Positions 1,655 through 58,280 are shown, counted from the stretch's first letter. The stretch: DNA of 64,000 nucleotides from Vitrella brassicaformis CCMP3155 (GCA_001179505.1 CDMY01000454.1:1-64000); one strand, 5' to 3'. The notes: generated by a model not told the origin, from the sequence alone. Numbers and translations: made by a program.

Positions 1655-4438
1655 CTATGTGGCGGCACTGCGGCGCTCGACACACAGCCCTTGGCCATCG
1701 AGGCTGAGCTTGTAGGGCCCGCCGCTGAGGAGGCTGATGCCGGCCTGCTGGGCTATGAAGCGCCGCTGGAAGTCGGTGCGCGTGTCAGCCTCAGTCAAAC
1801 CCACATATGTCTTCTTGTGACCCTGTCCGTCAGCCAAGAGGACGAATGGCGTAGCCACACTGCCTGACAGCTGTGTGTGTGTGTGTGTGTCTATGTGGTG
1901 TATTGCGTTGCGTTACCTTGAGCTCGTCCGTGAAGGACGTGATCGTGGCCATCACGTTACTGTAAAAGGTTTCATAGTGGTCATCCTCTACACCGCCTAC
2001 AGTGAATGAACACACACAGACGCCATGACTGCTGGTTGTCCCCTGCGCCCCCACCCCCTCACTGAGCACGGTGATCGTCACTTCCTCGACCGGCGGCAAG
2101 TTGTCGTTGCTGCGACGCCCCCACAGACACGGGATCCGGTTGTTGTGCACGGGCTCGACGAATGCACTCGCCGACAGATACCACTGGACTGAAAGGCTCC
2201 TCTCCCGCCCCCTGCTGCTGACCAGCGCCGCCTGCAGCCGCTCGAGGAACCGCCACACCTCACCAACAGGTCCATCCAGCTCCACGGCGTCCTCCCCATC
2301 TCCTACCTTGACGCACGACAGCCTCAGCATGTGCGAGGCGATCTCGAGGGCGCGTTTCACGTTGCCCTCATCGTCGAGGGCACCGTCCATCAGCTGCAGG
2401 GTGTGGGCGGCGGGGAATGTGTCGTCACTGATGACTGCAGGGATGGCCTCGTCCTCTCCAATGTAAGCCACCGTGCCGGCTCTTTTGGCGAAATCTCCGA
2501 TGAGTCGCCAAATGCCGGGGCCGCCGTTGCTGCGCGAGAGGAGCTCCGCGTCGATCCGTCCACACGTGCCGTCGTCAGTGAGTGCGAAGACGCCCTTCTC
2601 CACTGCTTCGGGATGAGCAATGGCGTCACTGATCGAAGGCAAAGCACAGGACTGAATGGCACCGTCTCTCTGCAGCCTCTCTCTCTCTCTCTCTGTCCCT
2701 CTCTCTGTTGTGTCCTTACATGAGCTGCGCAACGCTCTGGCACCGCTCCACAGGCTCGTCACTGCCCATTCACCTCATGTCGATCTCGAGCTCGCGAATG
2801 GACTGCCTTACGCCCCTCGCCACCATCACCTCACGGAGCTTGTCGATCCCGATGGCGCCGCTGCAATCCATCTGGACGCCCCGGAGTGTGCGAAGGGCCT
2901 TCAGCGACTTCCCGTCGGCGGGCAGCCCACTCAGCGCATTGGCCGCCGTACTGGCGTCCCGTCCGTTGAGCTGCAGCAGTTCAAGAGCTCCGCAGTCAGC
3001 CAGCCAAGTCCTTCCGCCCTTCACCCAACTAGCCGCCCAACTGTCCCTGGTGATAAGCGTCTTGACGGCAGGTGTGTGCCACTGGCGGTCCACACGCGCC
3101 AGCAGGCACTCGTGGGCTATGTTGCGGACTGTCTTGAGTGCCGGCAGGTGAATGGGGGCGGGGGGGGCGGGGGGCGGAGCTCGTGAGGGGGGAGGGTAGG
3201 GGATTACAATGCTGTCGTCGAGCTCGACGGCCTCGAATGACAGCACCTCCAATGTGCCCTGAGGCTCGTCAGCCGATCTGGGGTCGTCACCATCTCGCAT
3301 CGCCGCAGCGTCAGCTGTCCCCTCCCCTCCCTCCCTCTCCCGTCTCTTCCCTGCGATGGCCGCCCGCTGGATGGCGTGACCCTCCACTAATGCCACCCAG
3401 GTCCCGCGACACCATCCATCTGGGATGAGGGTCCATGGTAGCGAGAATTGGGGAGAGGTCCATGGGTGGCGGTGCCTGATCTCTCGCACGTTGGTCGCTC
3501 TCTCGCCCCAGTTGTGCGCCACGGCCAGCGGCATGGTCTCCCACATGCGCCGCGCCGTATCGTCCTGCCAGTCGATGACCAGTTTGGTGTAGTTGGCGGC
3601 CGACTGATGGAAGAGGGGCGTGCCGAGACGCCGGCGGTGGCGCGTCAGCTCCAGGGCTGCAGGTGGCCGAACACGTTGGCCAACTCGTCGCGCGACAGCC
3701 GACGACGGGCCTGAAGCGACAATCAACAGGACAGCAACACGCCATAGGCTGATTGAATCATGCCCGTTGCCGTGCGTGTCCCTTACAGGTCCTTGGTTGA
3801 CAGGAGGAGGGTTGCCACTTCTGTGGATCAGACGAAATGATGGACGACTCACTGCAGGTGCCTGCAGAAGACAGAGCAAGAGGCACCAATAGATACACAC
3901 ATGAAGAGTGCCGTGCTGCGGCCATCTGCTGTGCGCACCTCGGCATCATCTTGAGTGGCGGGATTGGGTGCGGCCGCCAGGATCGGCTTGAGTGCATCCA
4001 CCACCCGCGACACGTCCTCATGTGTGCGCGTGAGCTGCGACTGTGCTGTGGCGATGTGGGAGCTGACGAGGGCACGCTGCACATGAAGCTCCAGTGAGGT
4101 GGCCGACGGCGCCTGCGCGCAAAACAACAGCAGCAGTGTGCGAGAGCGATGCAGCAGTGTGTGTGACATGCCTGTCCAGAGAGGCTGGGAGGCTGCGCCT
4201 GCTCAAAGTGAGACCGCAACGCGCCAAGCTGCAAGGAAGACACATACACACAGAGCCGATGACTCTTGTCGCGCAGGAAGGCAGGCACACCGCTGTGTTG
4301 AGCTCCTGCAGGTGCCGGAGGCCCTCCTCGACTGCTCGCGTACCCTCCCTGACCTGACAGTCACACACGAGAATGGAAGACAATCATCAGAAAGAAATTT
4401 GTCTGTGGCGGTTGCTTGCCCACCTGATGCACATCCAT
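1655..4438 (-). pseudogene. Family A copy A1: F-box-like + LRR-like protein, disabled
   Basis: Start ATGGATGTGCATCAG|gt at 4438; RRRLSRDELANVFGHLQP motif; 1-nt deletion near 3651 (CCCTGGAG vs CCCTGGGAG); TGA for TGG at 2770-2772; last exon GHKKTYV...ERRSAAT*. Confidence 0.85.
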
Positions 4439-4494
4439 GCTGACAGGCTTATTAAATTGAACGACGAAATAATTCTCAAAATTTGAGCTCGCCA

Positions 4495-4516
4495 GTCGAG
4501 AATTCGCGCCTGAGAC
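4495..4516. promoter_or_regulatory. Candidate element in the bidirectional A1/B1 spacer
   Basis: GTCGAGAATTCGCGCCTGAGAC is retained as GTCGAGAATTACGCGCTTAGAGAC (reverse complement of 30451-30474) although the flanking spacer has diverged. Confidence 0.4.
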
Positions 4517-4627: not shown

Positions 4628-6030
4628 ATGCCCGACGGCACCAGCCCACACGCGCCTCGCGGAGCTCCACGAGGAGATCCAGCGGCTGCATGACGCATGT
4701 GCGGCCCTCACCCGGGAGAAGGAGGCGCTGGCCAAAGATAAGGAGGCGCTCTCCACAGGCAACGAGGAGCTGAGGGTGGAGAATCAACACCTCCGCCGAA
4801 AGCTAACCGAGAGGGAGCGGGAATATGAGGATAGGGGCATCGTAGAGCGATATAAGGGGGAGAAGGGCAGCCGGACGGACCACAGCATCTTCGTCCGGGC
4901 TGGCGCCAAGGAGCGCCATGATATGGGCAGCATCCCCGGCGCACATCCAGTGCAATTCTATGACGTAAGCGATGAAAACTACATGTGTTGCATGGGTCTC
5001 ACTCTCACTCATTCTGTGTGGTGTTGTGTTGTCACTCATGGATTCAGGAGGCAAGCCACTCCTTCAAGGTGGCGCAGACGAGGGCGGGCTACAAGTACGA
5101 CAGCAACGGGTACGCCAAGGACATCACCCACCTGTTCGGGCCGCAGATGGCGCAGGAGAAGGCTGTCGTGGTAGGTCACTCAACCAGCCTGGCCAGACAG
5201 CCCTTTGTGCACACTCTCGTCCCTTCGCCTCGCTGTTTGGCTTGTCGCTGGCTGTGTGTGCAGCACGTGAGAGTGGACCGTGCCAAGGCGCCGAGAAGGA
5301 CCTCCTCTACACCACGGGCGAGCGCCGGTATACGAGGGATCGAAGGCCGACCAAATACACGAACGCACACCAGCTGATGGAGGTGAATACCACAAGCACG
5401 CCGCCAGCACTTTATACGATTTCGTATCATTTCATCGCATGCTGTTGTGTGTGTGTGTGTGTGTGCGTGTGTGTGTGTGTGTGGTTTGTGCAGGAGATTC
5501 AGAAGCAGGGCCTGGAGGAGAAAATGACTCTAGAATTCGCCGGCGGTGCTGCCGAGTAGCAGCTCCTCGACGAGGCCATCCGCCATGGCATGGCCATCGA
5601 CTGGTCGGTGGAGGAGAGGGAGGTGAAAGTGGACGAGGAGGAGGAGCCCATCGACGGCGGGGAGGAGGGCGACGAGGAGATGGCCGAGAAGAAGAAAGAA
5701 GATAATCATAATCATCATCATAATCATCTGGTGCTGCAACATGTAAGTGACCGGAGCCTCCCGAAATGTCCCTCGGTCTATACATGGGTCTATCGGCGCC
5801 ATGTGTGTCTGTGTCTGACTCGTTGCAGTATCATTATCATCATCATTTTTCTGATCATGGTGGCCTACATGCGCCTGGAGGCGGGGGAGGACTGCACACA
5901 CGAACTAGAGACACTAAAGCGACTACGTGTAAGTCTCACTCGCGGAAGCCATGTCGATGTTTCTTTCTCTCTCTCTCTCTCCCTCTGTGTGTGTGTGTTA
6001 TTGGTCGCAGTTGGGCCACGACGCCCGTCC
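4628..6030 (+). pseudogene. Family B copy B1: coiled-coil/acidic/poly-Ile hypothetical protein, disabled
   Basis: ATG 4628 is out of frame with the downstream coiled coil; TAG for CAG at 5557-5559; frameshift in the Lys run near 5695; exons homologous to 29080-30349 (inverted). Confidence 0.75.
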
Positions 6031-7039: not shown

Positions 7040-8720
7040 ACTGCAAGCAGCGGTGTGGTTTGTTTAGTGCTCTCGGTATGGGTGGAACGGCGGACGGGAC
7101 AGACAGCAAATGTGTGTGTACATATGTAAGACTCTCTCTCTCTGCGTCTGTGTGAGAATATGTGTGTGGTGAAAGGCGGCACCGCTGCCCAATAAATTTG
7201 AATGCCTGGACAAATGGATGGATGGATGGATGGCACGAACCAATCTGGTCATCGTCACGAATTAAGTAGGTCACCACACACAGATACCTACACACACACA
7301 CGTGTTTGTCCACCCTCCACGCATCGTCTGTCCGCACAAGCCAGCTGCATCTGCCGCACACGAGTAGCTACCACCCGCCCCAACCAGACTCACGTTTCTG
7401 AGTCGAACGGCACACAGATCGGTGATGCTGGCGCGGGTGGTGCAGCTGGGCCTGGTCTCACCTGATTGGCAGCTGGACACGTCAGGCGCAGCGCTCGACG
7501 AACAGGGTGTAATTGTCGAAGCTGAGCTTATATGGCCCCCCATTGAGGTTGACGGCGGCCTGCTGTGCCAGGAAACGCTGCATAAACTCCAAGTGCGACT
7601 CTGTAAAGAAGACCTCAGTCCTCTCGTGGCCCTGTCGATCAGCCATTCCGATGAGAGGCGCACACACATTGCCCAGCGACCGCCTGTGGTCTGTCTGTCG
7701 GTGTGCTGCTTGTCTGTGCTGTGTGGCGCACCTTGAGTTTATGATTGAATGATGTAACTGTGGCCATCACGCCGTTGTAGAATTCGTCCAGCTCGTCATC
7801 CGGCACACCGCCTGAAATGCATGATGAGCAGACACAGCCACCATGCAGTCTCCACTCGTGCTCAGTCCCATTTCCCTTACCTTCGACGGTGATCCCCACT
7901 TTATCGATCGGCGGCAACTGACCGATGCCCCGATCCCACAGACAGGGGGTCGCGGAAGCATCCGTCGGGGAGGCTGTGAATGCCGCTGCCGACAGCACGA
8001 GGCTCACCGACAGGTGCCTCTCCCGCCCCTTCTTGACCAGCGCCGCCTGCAGCCGCGCGAGGAACTGCCACACCTCACCAGCAGGTGCACTCAGCTCCAC
8101 CTCGTGCTCATCTCCTGCCTGGACGCACTACAGGCTGGGCATGTTGGAGGCGATCTCGAGGGCCCGCTTCTTGTTGGCCCCATTGGCGAGGGCATCACCC
8201 ATTAGCTTCAGGGTGTGGGCGGCGGGGAATGTGTCGTCACTGATGGCCGCAGGGACGGCCTCGTCAAGACCGCTGTACACCACGGTGCCGGCTCTTTTGG
8301 CGAAGTCGCGAATGAGCTTCTGGGCGGCGGCGGGGCCGGTGCTGCTGCGCGAGAGGAGCTCCGCGTCGATCTGGCCGCACGTGCCGTCGTCAGTGAGTGC
8401 GAAGACGCCCTTTTTCCACTGCCTCGGGATGAGCAACGGCGTCACTGATCGAAGGCAAAGCACAGACATGAATTGCTCTCTCTCTCTCTCTCTCTGTGTC
8501 CCTCTCTCTGTTGTGTCCTTACATGAGCTGCGCAACGCTCTGGCACCGCTCCACAGGCTCGTCACTGCCCATCCACCTCATGTCGATCTCGAGCTCCCGA
8601 ATGGACCGGCTGACGCCCCTCGCCACCATCACCTCACGCAGCTCGTCGATCTCGGCGGGGATGCTTCCATATATCCGGACGCCTCGCAGTGTGCGAAGCG
8701 CCGCCAACGACTTCCCGTCG
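7040..8720. repeat. Inverted duplication of the A2 3' half and 3' flank, partner about 35330-37060
   Basis: Shared exons, introns and about 450 nt beyond the stop (gtggtttgtttagtgctctcggtatggg at ~7055 vs reverse complement at ~37025). Confidence 0.9.
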
Positions 8721-10528
8721 GCGGGCAGCCCACTCAGCATATCTTCCGTCGCGTCGGCCCTCCATCCGTCGACTGAGGTGAGCTCTTCGATGGCCTCACA
8801 GTTGGCCACCCATGCCCTCCCGCCCTCCACTGACGGCAACCATACCGTGGTGAAGGACTTGACAGCGGGCGTCCGCCACGGGCGGCCGACGCGAGAAGCC
8901 AGGGGAAAGGTGGATATGTTGTTGACCATCTTGAGTGCCGGCAGGTGGATTGGGGCGGTGGGGGCGGGGGGCAGAGCCCATGAGGAGGGAGGGAACAGGG
9001 AGATGTCAACGCTGTCGTCGTACTCGCCCTTCTCGAATGACAGCACCTCCAATGTGCCCTCGTCAGCCATGTGGCGGTCCCCATTCTTATGCGCCGCCGC
9101 AGCAATAGCTGTCCCCTCCCCTCCCTCCCTCTCCCGTCGTTTCTTGGCTGCGATGGCCGCCCGGCCGATGGCGTGACCCGTGACCCCTCCACTAATGCCA
9201 CCCAGGTCCCGTTGCACCATAGATCTGGACGACTGGGATACCGGTGCCTGATCTCTCGGACGTTGGTCGCCCTCTGCCCCCACTTCTGCGCCACGCCGAG
9301 GGGCATGGTCTCCCACATGCGCCGCGCCGTGTCGTCCTCACAGTCGATGACCAGTTTGGTGTAGTTGGCGGCCGACTGATGGAAGAGGGGCGTGCCGAGA
9401 CGCCGGCGGTGGCGCGTCAGCTCCCATGGCTGCAGGTGGCCGAACACGTTGGCCAACTCGTCACGGGACAGCCGACGACGGGCCTGAAGTGACAATCAAC
9501 ATGACATCAAAGTAAGGTCAAGATGGTTTAGATGTATCAGGTCTGTCCTGGTGTCGGTCTGACCGGTCTTTGGTGGTTGACAGGGGGAGGTTTTTTGGTT
9601 TTGCCGCTTTGATGGATCAGACGATACGATGGCCGCCGTGCCTGTGAGCAACACATGGGAGGGCATGGACACAATGCTTCCTCCCCTCTCCTTATGTGCA
9701 CTGTGATGTTTACCTGTGACTGTTCATCGGTCCCTTCAGCTGCCAAGCTAATGACTGGTGGTGCCGTGGCTGTGGCCGCCAGCGCACCAACCGCATCCGA
9801 GAGGCCCGACTCAGCAGATGACAGCTGAGTGACGGCGCTGTTGACATGGGCGGCGGCGAGGGACAGCTGCACGTGCACCTGCAGCGACTCAGGTGACGAC
9901 GCCTACGACAAGCAGGCAGCAGAGGGAGCAGCAGACACCATCTAGTGAAGTGCCTCGACCTGCTGCCTAGTGCAGGGTGTGGGTGTGTACCTCGAGAGGG
10001 TGATTGGCAGGGTCCAGCTGGTTGATCTGCGATAGATGAGCACCAACCTGATGCACACAGCGGGAAAGAAAGGGTGGCAAGGAAAGACACATGTGTGACG
10101 TCGAGTCTGTCAGGTGCGTCAGTCACATCACATCACATCACACCAGACCTGTGAGTGGAGCTGCAGCAGCTTCTCGAGGCTCTCCTCCACACCCGCCGAC
10201 TGCTCCTTCAACTGAACACAACACACAACACAACATGACTCGCCTGTCTGCCAATGGGAGATGCAGGCTTCTCCTGCCCGTCAGGCCGCCACTCACCTGA
10301 GCTACGTTCATGGCGCCGGTCTTCTGTCGCTATGCACAATTGGCAACGAACCGCAGCAGAGAGGCCTGCAACCATCACAAAACACATGAGCACAGTGGTC
10401 AAAAGCATGGCAAAGGCGGCCTTCTCTGTCTGCATTCTCTCTGCTGTGCTCGTCTGTCATCCCCTGCCCTGCCTTGTGAGCCCTTGTGAGCCCTCCCGCG
10501 CCACGCCTCTCACCTGATTGACGTCTAT
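7482..10528 (-). pseudogene. Family A copy A2, disabled
   Basis: Start codon ATA (ATAGACGTCAATCAG|gtgaga at 10528 vs ATG in A4); net +8 nt gggtcac duplication near 9172-9186; +1 A near 8411-8415; TAG for TCG at 8128-8130. Confidence 0.85.
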
Positions 10529-30516: not shown

Positions 30517-33307
30517 ATGGATGTGCATCAGATGGGCAGGCAACCGCCACAGACAAACTTCTTTCATCAGATCTGACGATTGTCTTCCATTCTCGTGTGA
30601 GACTGTACAGGTCAGGGAGGGTACGCGAGCAGTTGAGGAGGGCCTGCGGCACCTGCAGGAGCTCAGCACAACGGTGTGCCTGCCTACCCGCCTGCCTGCA
30701 CGAAACAAGCACTCTGTGTGTCTTCCTTGCAGCTTGGCGCGGTGCGGTCTCATTTTGAGCAAGCGCAGCCTCCCAGCCTCTCTGGACAGGTACGTCACAC
30801 ACACTGCTGCATCGCTCTCGCACATCGCTGCTGTTGTTTTGCACAGGCGCCGTCGGCCACCTCACTGGAACTTCATGTGCAGCGTGCCCTCGTCAGCTCC
30901 CACGTCGCCACAGCACAGTCGCAGCTCACGCGCACACATGAGGACGTGTCGCGGGTGGTGGATGCACTCAAGCCGATCCTGGCGGCCGCACCCAACCCCG
31001 CCACTCAGGATGATGCCGTGGTGCGCACAGCAGATGGCCGCAGCACGACACTCTCTCTGGGTGTTCATCGTTGGTCCTTGTTGCTCTGTGGTTTGCAGGC
31101 CCCTGCAGTGAAGCGCCCGTCATTTCGCCTCGTCTACAGAAGCGGCAACCCTCCACTTGTCAACCAAGGACACCAAGGACCGGCAAGAACGACCCCATGA
31201 TACATCTAAACCAGCTCGACCTTACTTTTATGTCATGTTGGTTGTCACTTCAGGCCCGTCGTCGTCTGTCGCGCGACGAGTTGGCAAACATGCTCGGCCA
31301 CCTGCAGCCCTGGGAGCTGGCGCCACACTGCCGGCGTCTCGGCACGCCCCTCTTCCATCAGTCGGCCGCCAACTACACCCACCTGGTCATCGACTGTGAG
31401 GACGACACGGCGCGGCGCATGTGGGCGGCCATGCCGCTGGCCGTGGCACACAACTGGGGAGAGAGGGCGACAAACGTCCGAGAGATCAGGCACCGGTATC
31501 CCAGTCGTCGAGAGGGCTGGTGCCGCGGGACCTGGGTGGCCGTGGTGGAGGGCCACGGGCGTGGCTGGGCGGCCATCGCAGAGAAGAAACGACGAGAGAG
31601 GGAGGGAGCGGAGGGGACAGCTGACGCTGCTGCGGTGGCGCAGGATGATGGCGGCCCCAGATTGGCTGACGAGGGCACATTGGAGGTGCTGTCCTTCGAG
31701 GAGGTCAAGCTCGACGACAGCATTGACATCCCCTACCCTCCCCCCTCATCTCTTCCGCCCCCCGCCCCCACCGCCCCAATCCACCTGCCGGCACTCAAGA
31801 CGGTCGACAACATTCCCACCTTTTCCCTGGCTTCTCGTGTGGGCCGCCAGTGGCGCACCCCTGCCGTCAAGACGCTCATCACCAGGGACATTTCGGTGGC
31901 TAGTGGTCTAAGGGCATGGCTGGCTCACTGCGAGGCCATTGAAGTGCTGCACCTCAACGGACGGGACGCCAGTACGGCGGCCAGCGCGCTGAGTGGGCTG
32001 CCCGCCGACGGGAAGTCGTTGGCGGCGCTTCGTACACTCCGGGGCGTCCGGATGTATTGGAGCATCCCCGCCGCCATCGACAGGCTGCGTGAGGTGATGG
32101 TGGCGAGGGGCGTCAGCAGGTCCATTCGGGAGCTCGAGATCGGCATGGGGTGGATGCCGAGCACTGATGAGACTGTGGAGTGCTCGCAGAACGTCGCACG
32201 GCTCATGTAAGGACACAACAGAGAGAGAGAGAGAGAGGCTGCAGAGAGACGGTGCAATTCATTCCTGTGCTTTGCCTTCGATCAGTGACGCCATTGCTCG
32301 TCACGAGGCAGTGGAGAAGGGCGTCTTCGCACTCAACAACGACGGCACGTGTGGACGGATTGACGCGGAGCTCCTCTCGCGCAGCAGCACCGGCCCCGCC
32401 GCCGCTCAGCAGCTCATTCGCGACTTCGCCAAGAGAGCCGGCATGGTGAACTACAGCGGAGATGACGAGGCCATCCCTGCAGCCATCACCGATGACACAT
32501 TCCCCGCCGCCCACTCCCTGCTGCTGCTCAGCGATGCCCTCGCCAATGGGGCCAAGAAGAAGCGGGCAGTCGAGATCGCCTCCCACATGCCCAGCCTGTC
32601 GTGCGTCGACGAAGGGGATGCTGCTGGGGACGGCGTGGTGCTGGATGCACCCGTCGGTGACCTGTGGAGCTTCCTCGAGCGGCTGCACGTGGAGTTGGTC
32701 AGGAGGGGCAAGGAGAGGAGCCTTACCCTGGGCCTCTGGCTGAGTCCTGCCGCATTCACCGCTTCCATGGAGGACCTCGCGAACCCCTGCCTGTGGGGGT
32801 GAGACTCTGACAAGCTGCCGCCGATCGAGACAGTGTACGTCAATATCGATGGTGAGCTCACCAACCATCGTATTGGGACGGCCATTGGCCCTGGCATTTG
32901 CGTATGGTGTATGTGTCTATTCGTTTCAGGCATTGAAGACGATGATCGGCATAAAGAGGATGCCGAATTGGAGACACTCTACCGGCATGTGATGGCCATG
33001 ATCACGTCCTTCAACCAAAAGCTCAAGGTGAGCCACAGTGCACGGTGCGCCCAGGTGTCAGTCAGCAGGCTGCAGGGCAATGTGTGTGTGCGTCTTTGAC
33101 CGCTCCTGGCTGAATGAATGACAGGGCCACAAGAAGACCTGTGTGAGTTTGCTCGGCAATGACCTGGGGTCCGACTTTGAGCGGCGCTTCCTGGATCAGC
33201 AGGCCTCTATCAACAACAGCGGCGGAGCATACGAGTTTAGCATCGCTCGCTCCGGCCTGCGTGTCGAGCGCCGTGATGCCGCTGGTCAATCAAATGGCTC
33301 TTCGTAG
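30517..33307 (+). pseudogene. Family A copy A3, disabled
   Basis: First donor is AT instead of GT (30532); GC donor at 31183; in-frame TGA at 32800-32802 (CLWG*); otherwise a full exon set ending GHKKTC...GQSNGSS*. Confidence 0.8.
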
Positions 33308-33817: not shown

Positions 33818-36610
33818 ATGGACGTCAATCAGGTGACTTCAGACACTCGAGGGCTCAGAGGCTCAGAGGGCAGAGCAGAGGATGACGCACGCAGTGCACG
33901 AACAGAAGCACACCACCATCTTCCGATTTCTTCCTTGTGATGTGTTTGGTTCTCTCTGCGTTCAGTTTGTTGCGAACGCCCGTGCCGTTAAGGACAGCTT
34001 GGCGCTGCTCCTCGACCAAGATGCCGCCACCGTCGCCGCACAGGTGGGCGTTATTCGCTGACGGAGAGGCCTGCACGACAGAGGAGCCGCTCACTGTGTC
34101 CTTGGTTGATGCAGGCGTCGTCGCCCGAGGCATGGCTGGTGAATCATCAGCTGGGATCGATAGCCCCACTGCTGAGCACCCTCACGACCCGGCTCCAGCA
34201 GGGAGGGCCCAGCCTCGCCAGCGCTGTAGCTGTAGATGCACCCAACTCGACCACCGAGGCCGCTGCTGCATCGGGAGCGGCACACACAAAGCCACAGGTG
34301 GGGTGAGGTGGGGTGAGGTGGGTGGCCGTCCATCGGCAGCTGACCATGGATCCGCCCTCTGCGTTGTTGTGGCTGTCGTGTTGTCTTATTGCACTGCAGG
34401 CGGCTGTGGCCAGTGGTCCATCGTATCGTTTGATCCATCGAAGCGGCAACCCTCCACCCGTCAACCAGGGACACCAAGGACCGGTAAGGGCCACGCATTA
34501 GAATGAGTATGATTCAATCAGCCCATGGAGTGTTGTTGTCCTCTTGCTCTTGCTTCAGGCTCGTCGTCGTCTGTCGCGCGACGAGTTGGCCAACGTGTTC
34601 GGCCACCTGCAGCCCTGGGAGCTGACGCGCCACCGCCGGCGTCTCGGCACGTCACTCTTCCATCAGTCGGCTGCCAACTACACCCACCTGGTCATCGACT
34701 GTGAGGACGACACGGCGCGGCGCATGTGGGAAGCCATGACACTGGCCGTGGCACTCAGATGGGGGCAGAGAGCGAGCAACGTCCGAGAGATCAAGCACCG
34801 CCACCCGTAGTGGCGAGACGGATGGTGTTGCGGCACCTGGGTGGCATTAGTGGAGGGACATGGGAGTGGCCGGGCGGCCATCGCAGACGAGAAGAGACGG
34901 GAGAGAGAGGGCGGGGAGGGGACAGCGGACGCTGCGGCGGTGGCGCAGGATGATGACGACCCCAGATCGGCTGACGAGGGCACATTGGAGGTGCTGTCAC
35001 TCGAGGAGGTCGACCTCGACGATAGCATTGTAATCCCCTACCCTCCCCCCTCACGAGCTCTGTCCCCCGCCCCCGCCGCCCCCATTCACCTGCCGGCACT
35101 CAAGACGGTCCGCAACATAGCCCACGATTGCCTGCTGGCGCGTGTGGGCCGTCAGTGGCGCACCCCTGCCGTCAAGGCGCTCATCACCAGGGACAATTGG
35201 GCGGCTAGTGGTCTAAGGGCATGGCTGGCCGAGGCCATTGAAGTGCTGGACCTCAACGGACGGGACGCCTATATTAGCGCGGCCGATGAGGAACTGGACC
35301 TCAACGGACGGAGGGCAGGCCTGACGGCCGATGCGCTGAGTGGGCTGCCCGCCGACGGGAAGTCACTCGCGGCGCTTCGCACACTGTGAGGCGTCCGGAT
35401 ATATTGGAGCAGCCCCGCGGACATCGACGAGCTGCGTGAGGTGATGGTGGCGAGGGGCGTCAGCCGGTCCATTCGCGAGCTCGAGATCGACATGGGGTGG
35501 ATGCGGAGCACTACCTTCACTGTGGAGCTGTGCCAGAGCGTCGCACGGCTCATGTAAGGACACAACAGAGAGAGGGACACAGAGAGAGAGGCGGGGAAAT
35601 GCAGACAGCTCAATTCATTCCTGTGCTTTGCCTTCGATCAGTGACGCCATCGCCCACCCCGAGGCAGTGGAGAAGGGCGTCTTCGAGCTCAGCAACGACG
35701 GCACGTGTGGAGAGATTCACGCGGAGCTCCTCTCGCGCAGCAGCACCGGCCCCGCCGCCGCCCAGAAGCTCATTCGCGACTTCGCCAAAAGAGCCGGCAC
35801 CGTGGCATACAGCGGTCTTGACGAGGCCGTCCCTGCGGCCATCAGTGACGACACATTCCCCGCCGCCCACACCCTGAAGCTAATGGGTGATGATGCCCTC
35901 GCCAATGGGGCCAACAAGAAGCGGGCCCTCGAGATCGCCTCCAACATGCCCAGCCTGTCGTGCGTCAAGGCAGGAGATGAGGAGCACGAAGTGGAGCTGG
36001 ATGCACCTGCTGGTGAGGTGTGGCGGTTCCTCGAGCGGCTGCAGGCGGCGCTGGTCAGCAGGGGCAAGGAGAGGAACCTTTCAGTCCAGTGGTATCTGGG
36101 GACGGGTGCATTCGTGCCACTGGAGCCCGTGCACAACAAGAGCAGCCCCTGTCTGTGGGATCGGGGCATCGGCCAGTTGCCGCCGATCGATGAAGTGAGG
36201 ATCTCCGTTCATGGTAAGGGACATGAGACTGCATGGTGGTTGTGTCCATTCACCATGCATTTCAGGCGGTGTAGCCGATGACGCGCTGGACGAACTCTAC
36301 AACAGCGTGATGGCCATGGTCTCCTCCTTCAACCACAAGCTCAAGGTGCGTCACACAGCACAGACAAACAGCACACCGACAGACAGCACACCGACAGACA
36401 GACCACAGACAGTCGCTGGGCAATGTGTGTAAGCCTCTTGTCGTGCTGGCTGATCGACAGGGCCACGAGAGGACTGAGGTTTTCTTTACAGAGTCGCACT
36501 TGGAGTTTATGCAGCGTTTCCTGGCACAGCAGGCCTCTCTCAACTTCAATGGCGGCCCATATAAGCTCAGCTTTGACGATATCACCCTGTTCGTCGAGCG
36601 CTGCGCCTGA
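33818..36610 (+). pseudogene. Family A copy A4, disabled
   Basis: ATGGACGTCAATCAG|gt at 33818; in-frame TAG 34808-34810 and TGA 35387-35389; internal LDLNGR duplication at 35246 and 35294. Confidence 0.85.
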
Positions 36611-42282: not shown

Positions 42283-42458
42283 CGCGAACGACCACGGTTG
42301 GGAAAAGTGCTCGTCGGCTCTAGCACAGAAAGGGCTGCGAGCTCAGACGAGAGAACGAAGAACAGGCCGAGGACGCCGAGGAGCACTTCGCCGCTGTGGC
42401 GAGCACACATCGCAACGTCACTCTGCAAAACCGCCACATTTGACCACATTCACAAGCG

Positions 42459-48931: not shown

Positions 48932-49187
48932 GGCGCTGGCGATTAGAGCGGTGGTTGAGAGAGGAGGAGGTGCACGGTCACGAGAGGGACGCAGGGGGGA
49001 AGGGGAGAGCCTGATGCATCAACGAGGAAGCGATCGGTAGCCGTGTCGTTGCAAAGCGATACGACAATGATGGAGGAAGGTCTGCGTAGCTTGGGCAGAT
49101 GGTCGCTATCTACCTTTCAGGGATGCCGCCGTGTAAACAGAGAGCGTTTTGTCGCGAAAGATCGCCTGTTCTAGCAGTGGGGTGGTC

Positions 49188-50390: not shown

Positions 50391-50424
50391 GTCGCTGAAG
50401 CCTCATCGGCGTGTTCATTTCTGC

Positions 50425-52407
50425 AGGGACTTCGAGAAGAAGTTCCTGCTCTTGGAGAACTTCTACCCCGCCCGTGTCTACTTGGCGAAGGTGGGGGGCT
50501 CGGAGGAGGTCAAGCAGCAAATGTTCTCAAGGTTCTTCAACAACGTACGTCAACTCCGGCAGACAAGATAGACAGCACAATGGGGCTCTGCATTGTGTGT
50601 GTGTGTGTGTCTGTGTGTCACCACAGAGCCATAGCCAGACGACCTCTGGGTGTGTCTTTTTGTCTCGCATCCGTCCTTTCCGCTGTGCGGGTGTGTCTGG
50701 CGGCCTCTCGTGCTCTACGAAGGATGACGTGCGTCGCATTTGACTTGCAAGACCTCATCTCGGGCGGCAGCGATTACATTCCGTTCGAAGTTTCGTCGGC
50801 GGTTCTTCTACCAGCCTGACGAGACCAAGAGAATACCCATGGGCCTCCAGCGCAGCATCCCATCGTACGACTACCTCTCGGTGCCGCAGTTGGACCTGCA
50901 CAAGGTGCCCGACGGCCCAATTCTGTAGACGCACTTCAACTGGGACGGCGTGTGCGACAAGAAGGGCTGTGGCGGCGGGAAGAAGTACTACATGCACGTG
51001 GAGCGAAAGCCCAACCACCCCGCCGAGTCAGACCCCTCCTCGCGCAAGGACGGGATGGGGCCCCGGAGCACCCTGCGCTGCACCGAGAACAGGGCGGATG
51101 ACGGCCGGGACCTGATGGGCAGGTTGCAGGAGAGGGTGCAGATGTTTGAGAGGGCCGAGCGGGAGTGGCTGAAGCACTTCGCGCGGCTCCGAGGGGTGAG
51201 TGAGAGAGGGAGGATACTTGTGTGTGTCCGTCCACGTATCCATGTTTTGTCTTGTGTCGTGTTTCTCAGGCGCATCACTGTCGGTCGTCTTCCTACTTGG
51301 AGTTCGAGGACCTGAGCGCCCACGAAGTCGACAACGAGGTCAGGAAAATGATGGCTTTGCTGCTTCGCAACACTTTCCTGGTTTGCTGCGTCGGCACACT
51401 CGAGGCCAGACGGTCCACCCTGGCCTTACAAACTCCAATGACCTCTGGCGCCTCGTGTCGTCGTACCTTCGTCAGCCCATTGCCGTGTGCAAAGCCTGCG
51501 CTTCAACCGCGACATTGCTCAGAGAGACTTGAGGGCAAATAAGACGAATGTCATCATCCACCGTCACACGATGATCACCACACCGCTATGTACACACCGT
51601 ACCAAACCGGGTAACTAGGCACGCTCAACGACTGCATCGAGAGGCGGGGCGTTGCGCCGATGAGCGAGCATGAGGCCTCCCACTGGGTGCGGCAGCTGGT
51701 GGAGACCCACCAGGAGCTCAAGGCCATGGACAGATCCTTCAAGTAAAGACCCATTCAACATGTTGACAGGCAGACACACACATCATGTCTGTCTGTGAAT
51801 GAATGTGTGCAGCGACTTCGACCTGAGGAGCTACCTGGTTGACGAGGCCAATACGGTCAAGCTGGCGTGCATGAGGTGGCGTGTTGGAAAGCACTCCGTC
51901 GCCACAGAGAGGACACAGAAACCGCTCACTCACTCACCAAGGTAGGCTCACGCCGCCGTCTCGAGGCTCCTTCGCGCACCGTCAGCGATGCGGTGCATCC
52001 CCAAAGGCCAGAATGAGTCTAGCACGCAGACATTCTAGAGTAAGTACCGCTTGTCTTCCCTCCCGGCCTCCTCCCGGTGCCAGGATACGAACGCTACCCG
52101 ACCATTCTACTCGTACGCCACACAACACACCGCACCACACCACACCACACACACATTCGTTGCGCATTGTCTGTTGTGTGTGTGTGTGTGTGTGTGTGTG
52201 TTTGGCATGTTGGCAGACGTATGAGTTTCCCGACGGCGAGCAGCTGAGCGTGCACGCCAACCTTGGCGCGCCCTTCAGGGGCGACAGTCGTGTGGGCTAA
52301 TGCGGCGCTCGTGTAGATGTTCGTGCGATGCTTCATGGCGGTCAGTGAGACACTCAGCGAGCGAAACACACGACTAATGTGTGCTCTGTGTGTATGTGTG
52401 TAGGGTC
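50425..52407 (+). pseudogene. Family D copy D1: possible degenerate protein-kinase-like gene
   Basis: Exon-like blocks AEREWLKHFARLRG, SYLEFEDL, MSEHEASHWVRQLVETHQEL, DFDLRSYLVDEANTVKLA; TAG at 50926-50928 where D2 has CAG; kinase call is inference. Confidence 0.5.
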
Positions 52408-52707
52408 NNNNNNNNNNNNNNNNNNNNNNNNNNNNNNNNNNNNNNNNNNNNNNNNNNNNNNNNNNNNNNNNNNNNNNNNNNNNNNNNNNNNNNNNNNNNN
52501 NNNNNNNNNNNNNNNNNNNNNNNNNNNNNNNNNNNNNNNNNNNNNNNNNNNNNNNNNNNNNNNNNNNNNNNNNNNNNNNNNNNNNNNNNNNNNNNNNNNN
52601 NNNNNNNNNNNNNNNNNNNNNNNNNNNNNNNNNNNNNNNNNNNNNNNNNNNNNNNNNNNNNNNNNNNNNNNNNNNNNNNNNNNNNNNNNNNNNNNNNNNN
52701 NNNNNNN
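52408..52707. other. Assembly gap (300 N) at the junction of the D1/D2 tandem duplication
   Basis: Run of N. Confidence 1.
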
Positions 52708-54720
52708 ACAGAGCCATAGCCAGACGACCTCTGGGTGTGTCTTTTTGTCTCGCATCCGTCCTTTCCGCTGTGCGGGTGTGTCTGGCGGCCTCTCGTGCTC
52801 TACGAAGGATGACGTGCGTCGCATTTGACTTGCAAGACCTCATCTCGGGCGGCAGCGATTACATTCCGTTCGAAGTTTCGTCGGCGGTTCTTCTACCAGC
52901 CTGACGAGACCAAGAGAATACCCATGGGCCTCCAGCGCGGCATCCCATCGTATGATTACCCATTGGACTGCACAAGGTGCCCGACGGCCCAATTCCGCAG
53001 ACGCACTTCAACTGGGACGGCGTGTGCGACAAGAAGGGCTGTGGCGGCGGGAAGAAGTACTACATGCACGTGGAGCGAAAGCCCAACCACCCCGCCGAGT
53101 CAGACCCCTCCTCGCGCAAGGACGGGATGGGGCCCCGGAGCACCCTGGGCTGCACCGAGAACAGGGCGGATGACGGCCGGGACCTCATGGGCAGGTTGCA
53201 GGAGATGGTGCAGATGTTTGAGAGGGCCGAGCGGGAGGGGCTGAAGTACTTCGCGCGGCTCCGAGGGGTGAGTGAGGGAGGATAATTGTGTGTGTCCGTC
53301 CAAGTATCCATGTTTTGTCTTGTGTCGTGTTTCTCAGGCCTATCACTATCGGTCGTCTTCCTACTTGGAGTTCGAGGACCTGAGCGCCCACTCGACGCCC
53401 AACGACTGCATCGAGGGTCGGGGCGTTGCGTCGATGAGCAAGCATGAGGCCTCCCACTGGGTGCGGCAGCTGGTGGAGACCCACCAGGAGCTCAAGGCCA
53501 TGGACAGATTCTCCAAGTAGGGACCCATTGGACATGTTGACAGGCAGACACACACATCATGTCTGTCTGTGAATGAATGTGTGCAGCGACTTCGACCTGA
53601 GGAGCTACCTGGTTGACGAGGCCAATACGGTCAAGCTGGCGTGCATGAGGTGGCGTGTTGGAAAGCACTCCGTCGCCACAGAGAGGACACAGAAACCGCT
53701 CACTCACTCACCAAGGTAGGCTCACGCCGCCGTCTCGAGGCTCCTTCGCGCACCGTCAGCGATGCGGTGCATCCCCAAAGGCCAGAATGAGTCTAGCACG
53801 CAGACATTCTAGAGTAAGTACCGCTTGTCTTCCCTCCCGGCCTCCTCCCGGTGCCAGGATACGAACGCTACCCGACCATTCTACTCGTACGCCACACAAC
53901 ACACCGCACCACACCACACCACACACACATTCGTTGCGCATTGTCTGTTGTGTGTGTGTGTGTGTGTGTGTGTGTTTGGCATGTTGGCAGACGTATGAGT
54001 TTCCCGACGGCGAGCAGCTGAGCGTGCACGCCAACCTTGGCGCGCCCTTCAGGGGCGACAGTCGTGTGGGCTAATGCGGCGCTCGTGTAGATGTTCGTGC
54101 GATGCTTCATGGCGGTCAGTGAGACACTCAGCGAGCGAAACACACGACTAATGTGTGCTCTGTGTGTATGTGTGTAGGGTCGTACCAGCGTGACGACGGG
54201 TGAGAAGAACACCCTGATGTGGGGCGGTGTCCACCACAAGACCAACCTCGACCACGGTATGGGATCCAGGCGGCTGCACGTCACACCGTGATTCATGTGT
54301 TGGTGTGTGTGTGCATCCATCACACTAGGAGCGGCGCATGGATACCCCGACCAGGGCTACTTCTTTAACGCGACACGTCCGCTGCACGACACACTGACGG
54401 AGGCATGGCGCCACCCTCCTCGGTGATTGCCTGAATGTCGCGTGTGCAGACGAGCTCCATGGCCACGGTATCGTGCCCACACCGATGGAGCAGACCCTCC
54501 TCACTGGCGACACTCCTCCACTCGGCACAGCGCCATATGGGAGGCCACCGACGCTCAAGTGGTCACCTCACTGACCACACACACATCACATCATCCAGTG
54601 AGTGTCAATTGGTTGCATTGATGGATGTGTGCGCAGCGTGCAAGGGCCCCCGTCTCCGGCTGACCTGCTGGTTGACGACGACGCCGATCTGGAGGAGCGT
54701 CTCAGGTGCTGGTGCTGCTG
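52708..54720 (+). pseudogene. Family D copy D2, tandem duplicate of D1 with further 3' exons; end approximate
   Basis: 52708 onward matches 50628 onward; frameshifting deletion near 52955-52970; 53535-54181 appears identical to 51761-52407. Confidence 0.5.
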
Positions 54721-55629: not shown

Positions 55630-58280
55630 CTATGTCGCAGCATTGCGCCGCCGAACGCACAGCTTGCGGTCGTCGAGGCTGAGCGTGTATGGTCCTCCGC
55701 TGAGGTTGAAGCCCGCCTGCTGAGGCATGAAACGCCGCCGAAACTCGACCACCAGCTGTTCGTCATCAATTATATGCACAACGGTGCTCTTGTGGTCCTC
55801 TTATTCAGTCAGCTCAGCACATCCACATTGCCAACCAGGAAGTATCTGGATGTGTCCGGTGTGGAAGTACAGCGCACCGTGAGTTTTCCCATAAATGAGG
55901 CGACCATGGCGATCACATGGTAATAGAATAGGTCGAAGTCGAATTCGTCATCCTCCACATTACCTGGAGTGAACACACACAAACATGGCCATACACAGAT
56001 TCCACGCCCCTACGGCTGACTCCCCCCTCACCAAACACATTGACAGTCACTTCCCCTATCGATGGGATGTCGTACGACGGGCCCCACATACAAGGGCTGT
56101 CATGAGTGTCCGGAGCCGCCGTGAGCTCGGCTGTCGACAGGTTTAGTTCTATGTCCAGGGTTTTCTCCACCTTATTGCTGACCAGCACCGTCTGCAGCTG
56201 CTCGAGGAAACGCCATACCTCATCAGCAGGCCATTCCAGGGGGTGAAAGTATTCATCATCTCCTGCCTTGACGAACGACAGGCTGGGCATGTTGGAGGCG
56301 ATCTCGACTGCGCGTGACACGTTGGCCTCATCGTCGAGGGCATCATTGAAGAGCTGCAGAGTATCCGCGTCAGGGAATGTGTTGTCACTGATTGCTGCAG
56401 GGATGGCCTCGGTACTCCCGCAGTAGGCAACGGTGTGGGCGACCTTGGCGAATCCGTCAATGATCTTCTGCATGGTGGGACTGCCGCTGCTGCGGCTGCG
56501 GGAGACGAGCTCCACGGCGATCTTCCCGCATTGAAGCTGACCAAGGTCCTCCGATATCGCTGCAGGATGCGCGACAGCGTCACTGCAGAAAACAATGACA
56601 CAGAAAGTCATACTGGCGATGTGATCTTCCCTGTCTTTGTGCCCCCACATGAATTGTGCCGTCTCCCGCAATTTTTCCCGGTATGGGGCTGCATCCCACA
56701 GAGAATCACCTATGTCGATCCCGAGTTCGCGAATGGACCGGCTGACGCCCCTCGCCACCATCACCTCACGCAGCCTGTCGATCTCGGCGTGGGAGACATA
56801 CTCATCCATCCGGATGCCGCGCAGTGTGCGAAGGGCTTTCAGCGACTTCCCGTCGGCGGGCAGCCCTCTTAGCGCATCGGCCATCTGGTCAGCGTCCCAG
56901 CGGACATTGTCCAGCACTTCTATGGCTTCACAATCGGTCAGCCATGTCTCCCCGGCATCCACGTCGCACGGAGACGCGTCGATGATGATCGTCTTGACTG
57001 CGGGTGCATACCATTTCCGGCCTAGACGAGCCGACAGATACTCCCAAGGCGTGTTGTCGATCGTCTTGAGTGCCGGCAAGTGGACGAGGGCGGTGGGGAT
57101 AGGGGGCAGGTCAGATGTGGGGTCGAGGTCGGGGTCGTAAATGCTGTCAGCGACCACGATGCTATCGTCGAGGTCGACGGCCTCGAATGACAGCACCTCC
57201 AGTGTGCCCTCGTCAGCCGACTGATTCCCTTGCCCTGCCACCGCCGGAGCAGCCGCTGTCCCCTGCCCTCCGTCCCTCTCTCGTCTCTTCTTCTCTGCGA
57301 TGGCCGCCCGCCCGATGGCGTGTCCCTCCACCAGTGCCACCCAGGTCCCGCGACGCCAGACCATGATGGTCCATCCGGGATGGCGGTGTTTGATCTCTCG
57401 CACGTTGGTCGCCCTCTCGCCCCAGTTGTGTGCCACGGCCAGCGGCATGGTCTCCCACATGCGCCGCGCCGTGTCGTCCTTACAGTCGATGACCAGGTGG
57501 GTGTAGTTGGCGGCCGACTGATGGAAGAGGGGCGTGCCGAGACGCCGGCGGTGGCGCGTCAGCTCCCAGTGCTGCAGGTGGCCGAACACGTTGGCCAACT
57601 CGTCACGCGACAGCCGACGACGGGCCTGAAGTGACAATTAACATGACATCAAATAAGGTCAAGATGCTTTAGATGTATCAGATCTGTCATGGTGTCGGCC
57701 TGACCGGCCCTTGGTGGTTGACAGGTGGAGCGTTGCCGCTTTGATGGATCAGACGATAGGACGGACCACTGGCCCCAGGCGCCTGCAATGCAATAAGACA
57801 ACATGACAGCCACAACAACGCAGAGGGCGGATCCATGGTCAGCTGCCGATGGATGGCCACCCACCTCACCCCACTGTGGCTCTGTGTGTGCCGCCCCCGA
57901 TGCGGCAGCGGCCTCGGTGGTCGACGTGTGTGCATCTACAGCTACAGCACTTGTGAGGCTGGGCTCTCTCTGCTGGAGCTTCTTGGGAAGAGTATCCAGG
58001 AGGCAGGCCACGGAATCCAGCTGATAACTCAACGCCAACCCCACTGGCGACGATGCCTGAAAGCAGCCAGGAAAGGCCCCTCTGGCATGGACGCCTCAGT
58101 CAATGAGCTTACCTGTGCGGTGATGGCGGCTTGGTCTTGGTCGAGGAGGCGTGATAAGCCATCCCTCACAGCACGGGCATTCGCAACCAACTGGCAACAG
58201 AAATGCACAGTCACTGTGGAATGCCCTTTCCTCCGCTGCAATTCCGTGCGCGTGCATCTCACCTCCTTATTGGGGTCCAT
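55630..58280 (-). CDS. Family A copy A5: apparently intact F-box-like + LRR-like protein
   Basis: ATG 58280 (MDPNKE|gt); no stop or frameshift seen in any inferred exon; last exon DHKST...RRRNAAT*; the donor after TEPQ lacks a G but an in-frame alternative (GAG|gtgggt) lies 9 nt downstream. Confidence 0.7.

What the first reader, a model, noticed from the sequence alone, without database searches (positions are those of the whole stretch)
1655..58280. Five-copy F-box-like/LRR-like gene repertoire, one intact and four disabled
Seen: copies A1 (1655-4438 -), A2 (7482-10528 -), A3 (30517-33307 +), A4 (33818-36610 +) and A5 (55630-58280 -) share exon structure. Each disabled copy has different lesions, so they died independently after duplication. 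LSRDELANVFGHLQPWELTRHRR resembles the F-box pattern (L..EL..IF..L.P.EL.R) and is followed by LxxLxxL-type repeats (LPALKTV, LKALRTLRGVRM, SIRELEID, FPAAHTLQL). Known: rapid birth-death of F-box genes marks SCF adaptors under conflict in plants and nematodes. Inference: a lineage-specific ubiquitin-adaptor or defence repertoire.
Basis: partly seen in the sequence, partly recalled or inferred. Interest (0 to 1): 0.75.

Follow-up and report, generated by a model that had tools for sequence, protein, structure and literature searches.

The report
Cryptic F-box/LRR gene cluster, mostly dead
This stretch of the alga Vitrella brassicaformis holds five copies of a species-specific gene, one intact and four broken in different ways. 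The protein appears to join a very divergent F-box (the hook to the cell's protein-tagging machine) to a leucine-rich-repeat target-binding domain, but no binding has been tested.

Summary

- **A5** is intact and equals public protein CEM14149.1 (715 aa, 8 exons).
- **A1-A4** each carry private lesions. A1 has a 1-nt deletion and a TGA. A2 has an 8-nt duplication, a 1-nt insertion and a TAG. A3 has one TGA. A4 has a TAG, a TGA and a 45-nt insertion.
- **The two N gaps** lie outside all five copies.

- **Pfam sees nothing**, not even at E = 10.
- **Head motif.** A profile of the head matches Pfam-positive Vitrella F-boxes in register (hhalign P 7.6e-6; 0 of 200 shuffles come near).
- **Fold.** AlphaFold with a diverse alignment (pLDDT 87) gives a short helical head packed on an LRR solenoid. 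Its best PDB matches are SKP2, FBXL2/3/5/17, TIR1 and COI1.
- **Skp1 link.** Two distant relatives are natural Skp1-like::F-box-like fusions. Skp1 and cullins are in the genome.

All relatives I looked up are from Vitrella. The head is nearly constant and the LRR part is twice as variable. The copies are recombinant mosaics.

SCF-adaptor function is inferred and the defence role is untested. Other windows of this scan already reported the same superfamily. I rate it a new variant of a known kind, of moderate interest.

The parts
55630..58280 (-). A5: intact gene (CEM14149.1, 715 aa). Exons: 58280-58263, 58190-58113, 58056-57865, 57782-57705, 57625-56649, 56582-56032, 55963-55878, 55797-55630.
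   Evidence: The translation of these eight exons equals P0001 exactly. My protein-to-genome alignment recovers the same 7 introns.
57497..57613 (-). F-box-like head of A5 (residues 127-165: LSRDELANVFGHLQHWELTRHRRRLGTPLFHQSAANY), at the start of exon 5.
   Evidence: hhalign to Pfam-positive F-boxes gives P 7.6e-6, with 0 of 200 shuffles reaching it. The AF2 exon-5 model shows helices 7-14, 19-24, 26-29 and 31-39, with 10-residue block means of pLDDT 81-96. The first 150 nt of exon 5 are 92-97% identical in all ten pairs of copies.
55630..57499 (-). Irregular LRR-like solenoid of A5 (residues about 165-715; exon 5 remainder plus exons 6-8; includes introns 5-7).
   Evidence: Alternating strand and helix elements. 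Foldseek top hits are TIR1, COI1, D3, FBXL2, SKP2 and RNase inhibitor. VIA Z scores are 8-10. The C-terminal 130 aa aligns to the ends of F-box/LRR models in the ESM Atlas.
57705..57782 (-). Exon 4 of A5, carrying the conserved motif PSYRLIHxSGxPPP just upstream of the head.
   Evidence: The motif is conserved in alignment A1 and in 30-40%-identical paralogues on other contigs. Its function is unknown.
1658..4362 (-). A1: pseudogene. It has a 1-nt deletion in the W codon of the head motif (between 3653 and 3652) and TGG>TGA at 2772-2770. The public model CEM14122.1 covers only 3534-1658.
   Evidence: for the lesions; for the model.
7491..10528 (-). A2: pseudogene. It has an 8-nt tandem duplication at about 9176-9186 (frameshift), a 1-nt insertion at about 8415 (frameshift), and TAG at 8130-8128. 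No public protein model matches it at 95% identity or more.
30599..33307 (+). A3: a copy with a single in-frame TGA at 32800-32802, about 100 codons before the end. It also has a GC donor at 31183. Otherwise the frame is open.
33818..36610 (+). A4: pseudogene. It has TAG at 34808-34810, CGA>TGA at 35387-35389, and a 45-nt in-frame insertion at about 35231-35290. The public model CEM14136.1 splices around these.
   Evidence: for the lesions; for the model.

Best explanation
The five loci are paralogues of a gene family so far seen only in Vitrella brassicaformis. The product has four parts:
- an N-terminal helical (coiled-coil-like) segment;
- a low-complexity linker ending in a conserved SYRLIHxSGxPP motif;
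- a highly divergent F-box;
- an irregular leucine-rich-repeat solenoid of about 15 repeats that runs to the C-terminus.

The most likely mechanism, which is inferred, is that the intact member A5 docks through its F-box-like head onto Skp1 and so onto a cullin-RING ligase. The variable LRR surface would then select the protein to be ubiquitinated. That makes it a lineage-specific FBXL-type SCF substrate receptor.

The cluster evolves by duplication, by recombination or gene conversion between copies (which keeps the head nearly identical), and by decay. A1, A2 and A4 are pseudogenes with several private lesions. A3 carries one private nonsense codon.
For: Shown:
- Five copies, one intact, with private lesions.
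- The organism and the absence of named relatives elsewhere.
- A large family in the own genome: 82 matches from 320 candidates.
- The head is homologous to F-boxes by profile-profile comparison, in the correct register and at the correct position. An HMM built only from Pfam-positive Vitrella F-boxes lands on the same motif in roughly two dozen family proteins.
- More distant relatives show canonical LPxD/E..L...L..LP and LCKQW forms at that position.
- The AF2 exon-5 model has pLDDT 87.4 and pTM 0.87, with a helical head followed by beta/alpha repeats.
- Foldseek's best hits are COI1, FBXL2, TIR1, MAX2 and SKP2.
- VIA gives Z 8-10 to SKP2, FBXL17, FBXL5, FBXL3, FBXL2, KDM2A/B and TIR1. From what I recall of those proteins' domain boundaries, the aligned chain ranges start near their F-boxes.
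- The ESM Atlas nearest clusters, by features and by structure, are F-box proteins, aligned from residue 126-139 onward.
- Relatives CEM22146.1 and CEL94714.1 join a Skp1-like N-terminus to an F-box-like motif and the same downstream module.
- Skp1 (both domains) and cullins are encoded in the genome.
- The head is constrained and the LRR is more variable. dN/dS is 0.25-0.49 for the head against 0.56-0.75 for the LRR. Column entropy is 0.68 against 1.44 bits.
- Identity along the genes is mosaic.
Against: - Pfam F-box, F-box-like and LRR models do not reach even E = 10 on any close family member. Genome-wide PF12937 and PF00646 scans hit none of the family loci.
- hhalign covers only the first two helices (27 columns). 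The third helix lacks the usual V-C/S-K/R-x-W. The canonical Pro after the first Leu is Ser in the close family.
- TM-scores to solved F-box/LRR proteins are low (0.2-0.37). A non-F-box LRR protein, RanGAP, scores as high (Z 10.2) as SKP2 (Z 10.0). So the fold search proves the LRR, not the F-box.
- The first full-length model was poor in the head (pLDDT below 50).
- No Skp1 contact was modelled or measured.
- No expression data for A5 were seen.
Confidence: 0.65

Rival explanations
1. The proteins are LRR proteins whose N-terminal helices descend from, or merely resemble, an F-box but no longer bind Skp1. They would act outside SCF ligases, for example as scaffolds or sensors, with the head serving only as an N-terminal cap of the solenoid.
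For: Pfam F-box models fail completely. The LP proline and the third-helix tryptophan are replaced in the close family. The non-F-box LRR protein RanGAP matches the model as well as SKP2 does.
Against: The head is the most conserved part of the protein, in sequence and even at synonymous sites, which is not expected for a relic. The profile match to true F-boxes is in register and position-specific. Relatives fuse the same head and module to a Skp1-like domain.
Confidence: 0.2
2. The 'dead' copies are not dead. The lesions would be assembly or consensus errors in a repetitive, recombining cluster, or they would be bypassed by splicing, as the public gene models for A1 and A4 assume. Several copies would then be functional.
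For: The A1 frameshift is a GGG to GG run-length change. A3 has only one nonsense codon. The contig has two N gaps, and a 2.07-kb redundant duplicate flanks one of them. The annotators called models at A1 and A4.
Against: There are nine separate lesions of different kinds (substitutions, an 8-nt duplication, single-base indels) in four copies. A5 and most exon-5 copies sampled elsewhere are open: in a filtered sample of 32 other loci, a handful stop early. The public models pay for bypassing the lesions by losing the F-box-like head (A1) or conserved blocks (A4; see the gaps of P0022).
Confidence: 0.1
3. The family is cargo of, or derived from, a mobile element. On this view the clustered, decayed copies reflect transposition and decay rather than host gene birth and death.
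For: Copy number is high, pseudogenes are many, and copies lie in both orientations with high-identity patches.
Against: None of the ten long flanking ORFs tested has a transposase, reverse-transcriptase or integrase domain. The neighbours include an RsmB/NSUN methyltransferase and an MFS transporter. The copies keep 7-8 spliceosomal introns at conserved positions. The shared flanks are pairwise (A1/A3, A2/A4), as in segmental duplication, not common termini.
Confidence: 0.05

Closest known systems
FBXL-type F-box/LRR substrate receptors of SCF ligases (SKP2, FBXL2/3/5/17, KDM2A/B; plant TIR1, COI1, MAX2/D3)
   Same: An N-terminal short helical head is followed directly by a ribonuclease-inhibitor-like LRR solenoid. 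These proteins are the best structural matches. The head aligns to F-box profiles in register.
   Different: No Pfam F-box or LRR model detects the family. The LP proline and the third-helix W are replaced in the close family. The repeats are irregular, with long insertions (a 30-residue helix and a charged disordered loop inside the first repeats). There is an extra N-terminal coiled-coil-like segment and a conserved SYRLIHxSGxPP motif. Skp1 binding is untested.
Lineage-specific F-box expansions with birth-and-death evolution (plant FBX/FBD-LRR genes, Caenorhabditis F-box families). This comparison rests on my own knowledge of the literature.
   Same: There are dozens of clustered paralogues and many pseudogenes. 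A conserved F-box head is joined to a faster-evolving target-binding domain.
   Different: This is in a chromerid alga, and the family is undetectable by standard models. Homogenisation of the head extends to synonymous sites and into the preceding intron, which points to gene conversion rather than only purifying selection.
Pfam-positive Vitrella F-box family 'LDGLPPDVAHIVLAFLPTKD...VYRHLVIG' (for example C643, C529, C706, C984, C295, C542)
   Same: It is in the same genome. The F-box is followed at the same spacing by a Y-x-H-L-V-I strand, as in the family's YTHLVID.
   Different: It passes the Pfam cut-offs. The family HMM finds no significant similarity to it beyond the head.
Vitrella Skp1-like::F-box-like fusions CEM22146.1 and CEL94714.1
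   Same: They carry the same F-box-like motif and the THLxID...WC...VEGHA module with downstream repeats (hmmsearch domain E 4.7e-20 and 8.1e-14).
   Different: They carry a Skp1-like N-terminus. Skp1_POZ scores E 7.7e-12 in one; the other scores 19.6 bits, below the 21.9-bit cut-off. The window's copies have a coiled-coil-like N-terminus instead.

Membership tests
F-box proteins (Pfam PF00646 / PF12937 clan) | The sequence matches an F-box profile at the curated threshold. | tested here: not met
   No F-box hit at E <= 10 for A5, for 19 family proteins, or for 10 distant paralogues. Genome scans with PF12937 and PF00646 hit none of the family loci.
F-box proteins (Pfam PF00646 / PF12937 clan) | Remote homology of the motif to bona fide F-boxes (profile-profile comparison). 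| tested here: met
   hhalign of the family head (47 sequences) against 21 Pfam-positive Vitrella F-boxes gives Prob 84%, P 7.6e-6 and score 26.7 over 27 columns. The column-shuffle null is 7.8 +/- 1.6 with a maximum of 12.3 (0 of 200 reach the observed score); the reversed head scores 6.4. The best hit in the whole profile is residues 127-149. Only helices 1-2 are covered.
F-box proteins (Pfam PF00646 / PF12937 clan) | A three-helix F-box fold placed N-terminal to the substrate-binding domain. | tested here: inconclusive
   The AF2 exon-5 model shows helices 7-14, 19-29 and 31-39, with block means of pLDDT 81-96. VIA alignments to SKP2, FBXL2/3/5/17 and TIR1 begin at about where I recall their F-boxes lying. 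However, only first and last aligned residues are reported, and RanGAP scores as high.
F-box proteins (Pfam PF00646 / PF12937 clan) | Binds Skp1. | not testable with these tools
   Co-folding is not available here. The indirect evidence is the Skp1-like fusions in relatives and the presence of Skp1 and cullins in the genome.
Leucine-rich repeat proteins (RI-like / FBXL class) | The sequence matches LRR profiles. | tested here: not met
   Only one of 19 members touches PF24758, at E 0.054. One distant relative reaches 2.5e-11.
Leucine-rich repeat proteins (RI-like / FBXL class) | A curved solenoid of beta-strand/helix repeats. | tested here: met
   Regular strand/helix alternation over residues about 300-710, with pLDDT mostly 80-96. 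Foldseek gives E 2.6e-7 and prob 1.00 to TIR1, and also hits RNase inhibitor and NLR LRRs. VIA gives Z 8-10 to RNA1p/RanGAP, SKP2 and RNase inhibitor.
PIP-box-tailed branch of the Vitrella F-box/LRR superfamily (earlier scan notes s1-197158, s1-212182) | A C-terminal Qxx[ILM]xx[FY][FY] motif. | tested here: not met
   A5 ends ...GGPYTLSLDDRKLCVRRRNAAT and the family consensus ends ...LxVERR. No such motif is present.

The most novel reading that the evidence does not exclude
The superfamily is a diversifying recognition repertoire. A gene-conversion-maintained constant head plugs into the ubiquitin machinery. The heads are shuffled between copies, and the LRR bodies evolve quickly and turn over by birth and death to track changing targets such as viruses, mobile elements or symbiont and competitor proteins. 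That would be an SCF-based innate-immunity-like system in a free-living relative of apicomplexan parasites.
Probability: 0.2. Interest if true: 0.7.

Novelty: new variant of a known kind. Interest (0 to 1): 0.45.

Why it matters
Public databases list these proteins only as 'unnamed' or 'uncharacterized', with no domain.

- **More receptor candidates.** If they are cryptic F-box/LRR receptors, Vitrella gains dozens of candidate ubiquitin-ligase substrate receptors. Vitrella is used as the free-living reference point for apicomplexan evolution.
- **Under-counted F-box proteins.** It would show that F-box censuses based on Pfam under-count F-box proteins in alveolates.
- **An example of repertoire turnover.** The cluster combines a head kept nearly identical at the nucleotide level, mosaic bodies and independent gene deaths within 57 kb. 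This gives a compact example of how such repertoires turn over.

The practical limit is that nothing is known of targets, expression or Skp1 binding.

Tried and rejected
- **Pfam on the long ORFs, on 19 family proteins and on 10 distant paralogues:** nothing relevant.
- **Profile search of PDB sequences:** one chance hit to alkaline phosphatase, E 0.19.
- **First hhalign, using only the close family (Neff 1.7):** right register but not significant (Prob 5.9%). It became significant only with the diverse alignment.
- **Full-length AF2 with 19 close paralogues:** the head was unresolved (pLDDT below 50). It was replaced by the exon-5 model built with 47 diverse rows.
- **Family HMM against loci of Pfam-positive F-box genes:** no significant similarity beyond the head, so I make no claim that those genes belong to the family.
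- **Codon-projected reading of a five-way MAFFT alignment:** this mis-called lesions near intron 5, because the exon 5 boundary of A5 differs. I replaced it with a protein-to-genome dynamic programme and checked each lesion in the nucleotide alignment.
- **My first 'longest ORF' extraction of F-box segments:** this failed in GC-rich DNA and was redone from the match coordinates.
- **Mobile-element origin:** no transposition domains in ten flanking ORFs.
- **PIP-box tail:** absent.
- **Literature:** two full-text searches found no description of this family. The one paper I opened, of the eight that mention both Vitrella and F-box, only BLASTs Toxoplasma F-box proteins against Vitrella (PMC11570480).

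**Handling of spliced models.** I handed no self-joined spliced model to any search tool. The spliced A5 product was represented by the public protein P0001. A script showed that P0001 equals the translation of the eight exons. Exon 5 was searched by reference. No mended version of A1-A4 was built.


Full report
**Origin of the window.** The window is contig C454 of a 72.7-Mb, 1064-contig genome with about 58% G+C. Every named relative of the encoded protein is from Vitrella brassicaformis CCMP3155, a chromerid alga related to Apicomplexa. The best hit, P0001 (715 aa, CEM14149.1), lies on a 73,519-bp contig and is the public model of copy A5.

**Observation.** The repeat finder links the same places. 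The copies are 63-79% identical in DNA.

A5 translates exactly into P0001 as eight exons. A protein-to-genome dynamic programme that I wrote, with states for frameshifts, stops and phased introns, recovers its seven introns, all with GT donors.

I applied the same programme to A1-A4 with four different guide proteins and verified each result in a nucleotide alignment. It gives these lesions:
- **A1:** one G is missing from the TGG codon of the conserved QPWEL motif (between 3653 and 3652), and there is a TGG>TGA at 2772.
- **A2:** an 8-nt tandem duplication at about 9176-9186, an extra base at about 8415, and a TCG>TAG at 8130.
- **A3:** a single TGA at 32800, otherwise open, plus a GC donor at 31183.
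- **A4:** TAG at 34808, CGA>TGA at 35387, and a 45-nt in-frame insertion at about 35231-35290.

None of these is shared, so the inactivations are independent. The public annotation has models at A1 (CEM14122.1) and A4 (CEM14136.1). They dodge the lesions by starting downstream of the frameshift or by adding introns, at the cost of the head or of conserved blocks.

**The assembly gaps.** The two 300-N runs do not touch any copy. The run at 43564-43863 sits inside a poly-C tract. The run at 52408-52707 sits at the junction of a 2.07-kb duplicate: 51621-52407 recurs at 53395-54181 at 98.6% identity. Continuity across them is therefore irrelevant to the five genes.

**Standard domain searches are blank.** Pfam gives no hit for A5, for 19 family proteins or for ten 30-40%-identical paralogues from other contigs. 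A profile search of PDB sequences gives only chance. Six-frame scans of the whole genome with PF12937 and PF00646 find about 50 places each, none at a family locus.

**Is the head an F-box?** I collected 21 Vitrella segments that the Pfam F-box models do recognise. I compared their alignment with the family head by hhalign.
- With only close paralogues the match was in register but weak.
- With a 47-row alignment that includes distant paralogues and relatives, it reached Prob 84%, P 7.6e-6 and score 26.7 over 27 columns.
- 200 column shuffles gave 7.8 +/- 1.6, with a maximum of 12.3. The reversed alignment gave 6.4.
- Scanned against the whole 715-column family profile, the F-box profile picks residues 127-149 as its best match, starting at the 'LP' position.
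- An HMM built only from the true F-boxes lands on the same motif in roughly two dozen family proteins.
- More distant relatives have canonical-looking forms there, such as IDLPNDVLCLITAFLPLWKL, KLPCDLLLTTLAYLPLRLL and ...LSAVPTLCKQW.

The match covers helices 1-2 only. The close family has Ser for the canonical Pro and lacks the third-helix Trp.

**Structure.**
- A full-length AF2 model from 19 close paralogues was good for residues 300-710, which form alternating strands and helices, but poor for the head. Foldseek nevertheless ranked TIR1, COI1, D3, FBXL2, SKP2 and ribonuclease inhibitor first (E down to 2.6e-7).
- A second model, of exon 5 alone with the diverse alignment, reached pLDDT 87.4 and pTM 0.87. 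It shows helices at 7-14, 19-24, 26-29 and 31-39, followed by a strand (HLVID) and irregular repeats.
- Foldseek again put COI1, FBXL2, TIR1, MAX2 and SKP2 on top.
- VIA-align gave Z 8-10 for SKP2, FBXL17, FBXL5, FBXL3, FBXL2, KDM2A/B and TIR1. The aligned chain ranges begin about where I recall those proteins' F-boxes lying. RanGAP, an LRR protein without an F-box, scored Z 10.2.
- The ESM Atlas independently places the protein among 'F-box domain-containing' clusters, by features and by structure, aligned from residue 126-139. It aligns the last 130 residues to the C-terminal ends of F-box/LRR models.

I take the LRR fold as established at the level of prediction. I take the F-box fold as consistent but not proven by structure alone.

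**Link to Skp1.** A profile search of 1.84 billion representative proteins found 129 relatives. All 20 that I looked up are Vitrella proteins, or environmental entries that cluster with them.

Two of the relatives, CEM22146.1 and CEL94714.1, begin with a Skp1-like domain. Skp1_POZ scores E 7.7e-12 in the first and is just under the cut-off in the second. The domain is followed by an F-box-like motif and the same THLxID...WC...VEGHA module. Such a fusion of two normally separate partners is indirect evidence that the head works with Skp1.

A canonical Skp1 with both domains (C278) and at least three cullin loci are present in the genome.

**Evolution within the cluster.**
- Pairwise dN/dS is 0.25-0.49 for the head plus module, 0.56-0.75 for the LRR part and 0.33-0.73 for the C-terminal part.
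- Column entropy among 19 proteins is 0.68 bits in the head against 1.44 in the rest. The most variable positions lie just after the LRR strands.
- The first 150 nt of exon 5 are 92-97% identical in all ten pairs. Elsewhere the closest partner changes along the gene: A5 with A4 in the N-terminal exons, A1 with A3 in several blocks, A1 with A4 in mid-LRR, and A2 with A4 at the 3' end at 84-98%. The repeat tracts that include the head also reach about 28 nt into the preceding intron. This is the signature of recombination or gene conversion among paralogues.
- Outside the window, most sampled exon-5 copies are open, so this cluster is unusually decayed.
- Flanking long ORFs are ordinary genes (an RsmB/NSUN methyltransferase and an MFS transporter) or unknown. 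None has a transposition domain.

**Comparison with what is known.** The closest known kind is the FBXL class of SCF substrate receptors. The evolutionary pattern resembles the lineage-specific F-box expansions of plants and nematodes (this is from my own knowledge). Membership by curated sequence models fails; membership by remote homology and by predicted fold is supported; the defining biochemical property, Skp1 binding, could not be tested.

I found no paper describing the family. PMC11570480 only reports BLAST searches of Toxoplasma F-box proteins in Vitrella.

Earlier notes of this scan on other windows of the same genome describe the same superfamily. One branch has a PCNA-binding tail, some members have shuffled heads, and one is a Skp1 fusion. 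The present family lacks the PIP tail.

**Verdict.** The F-box/LRR reading is supported by four partly independent lines: the profile-profile match, the predicted fold, the language-model neighbours and the Skp1 fusions. It remains computational, and the defence idea is open. I rate this a new variant of a known kind, of moderate interest.

**Handling of sequences.** I submitted no self-joined spliced sequence to a search. The public protein P0001 and exon references were used instead. No repaired version of A1-A4 was made.

Noticed in passing
window 1-1124 and 45576-47421: A cysteine-rich repeat gene with units such as CPYGFKFDDETHKCIKYDYADLKYYCP. The start of the window is 93-100% identical to 46278-47421, and there are further 62-83% units in tandem at 45576-46220.
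   Followed up: no
window 50623-54181: A 2.07-kb direct duplicate (95-99% identical) brackets the N run at 52408-52707. It may be a redundant haplotype or scaffolding artefact, or a true tandem duplication.
   Followed up: partly
window 43534-43893: The first N run lies inside a long poly-C tract, with C runs on both sides. This suggests a sequencing drop-out in a homopolymer.
   Followed up: partly
window 4803-5697 and 29431-30286: The upstream flanks of A1 and A3 are 91-96% identical in inverted orientation. That is more alike than the genes themselves (79%), so the duplication unit includes a neighbouring sequence or gene.
   Followed up: no
window 41713-42283 and 49190-49760: A 571-nt inverted repeat (94%) lies inside two long ORFs, 40906-42282 (minus) and 49149-50819 (plus). 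Neither has a Pfam hit, so this is a second duplicated unknown gene pair.
   Followed up: partly
window 57705-57782 (exon 4 of A5) and its equivalents in L014-L026: The motif PSYRLIHxSGxPPP just upstream of the head is kept even in 30-40%-identical paralogues. No known function; possibly a docking or modification site.
   Followed up: no
P0097 = CEM22146.1 (near G000:C552:42196-42273) and P0119 = CEL94714.1: These are single polypeptides that join a Skp1-like N-terminus to an F-box-like motif and the family's downstream module.
   Followed up: partly
P0080, P0085, P0099, P0068 (Vitrella proteins of 1037-1160 aa): These relatives have the head and module at the N-terminus and a TLDc domain near the C-terminus (E 8e-7 to 2e-4; only P0085 passes the cut-off). 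The head is therefore combined with other bodies.
   Followed up: partly
G000 loci L011, L059, L061-L065 (C643, C529, C674, C706, C984, C295, C542): A multi-copy, Pfam-positive F-box family 'LDGLPPDVAHIVLAFLPTKD...VYRHLVIG', whose F-box is followed by the same Y-x-HLVI strand as in the window's family.
   Followed up: partly
window 11253-12971 (+) and 38495-39532 (+): Ordinary neighbouring genes: an RsmB/NSUN-type RNA methyltransferase (E 9e-47) and part of an MFS transporter (E 3e-11).
   Followed up: no
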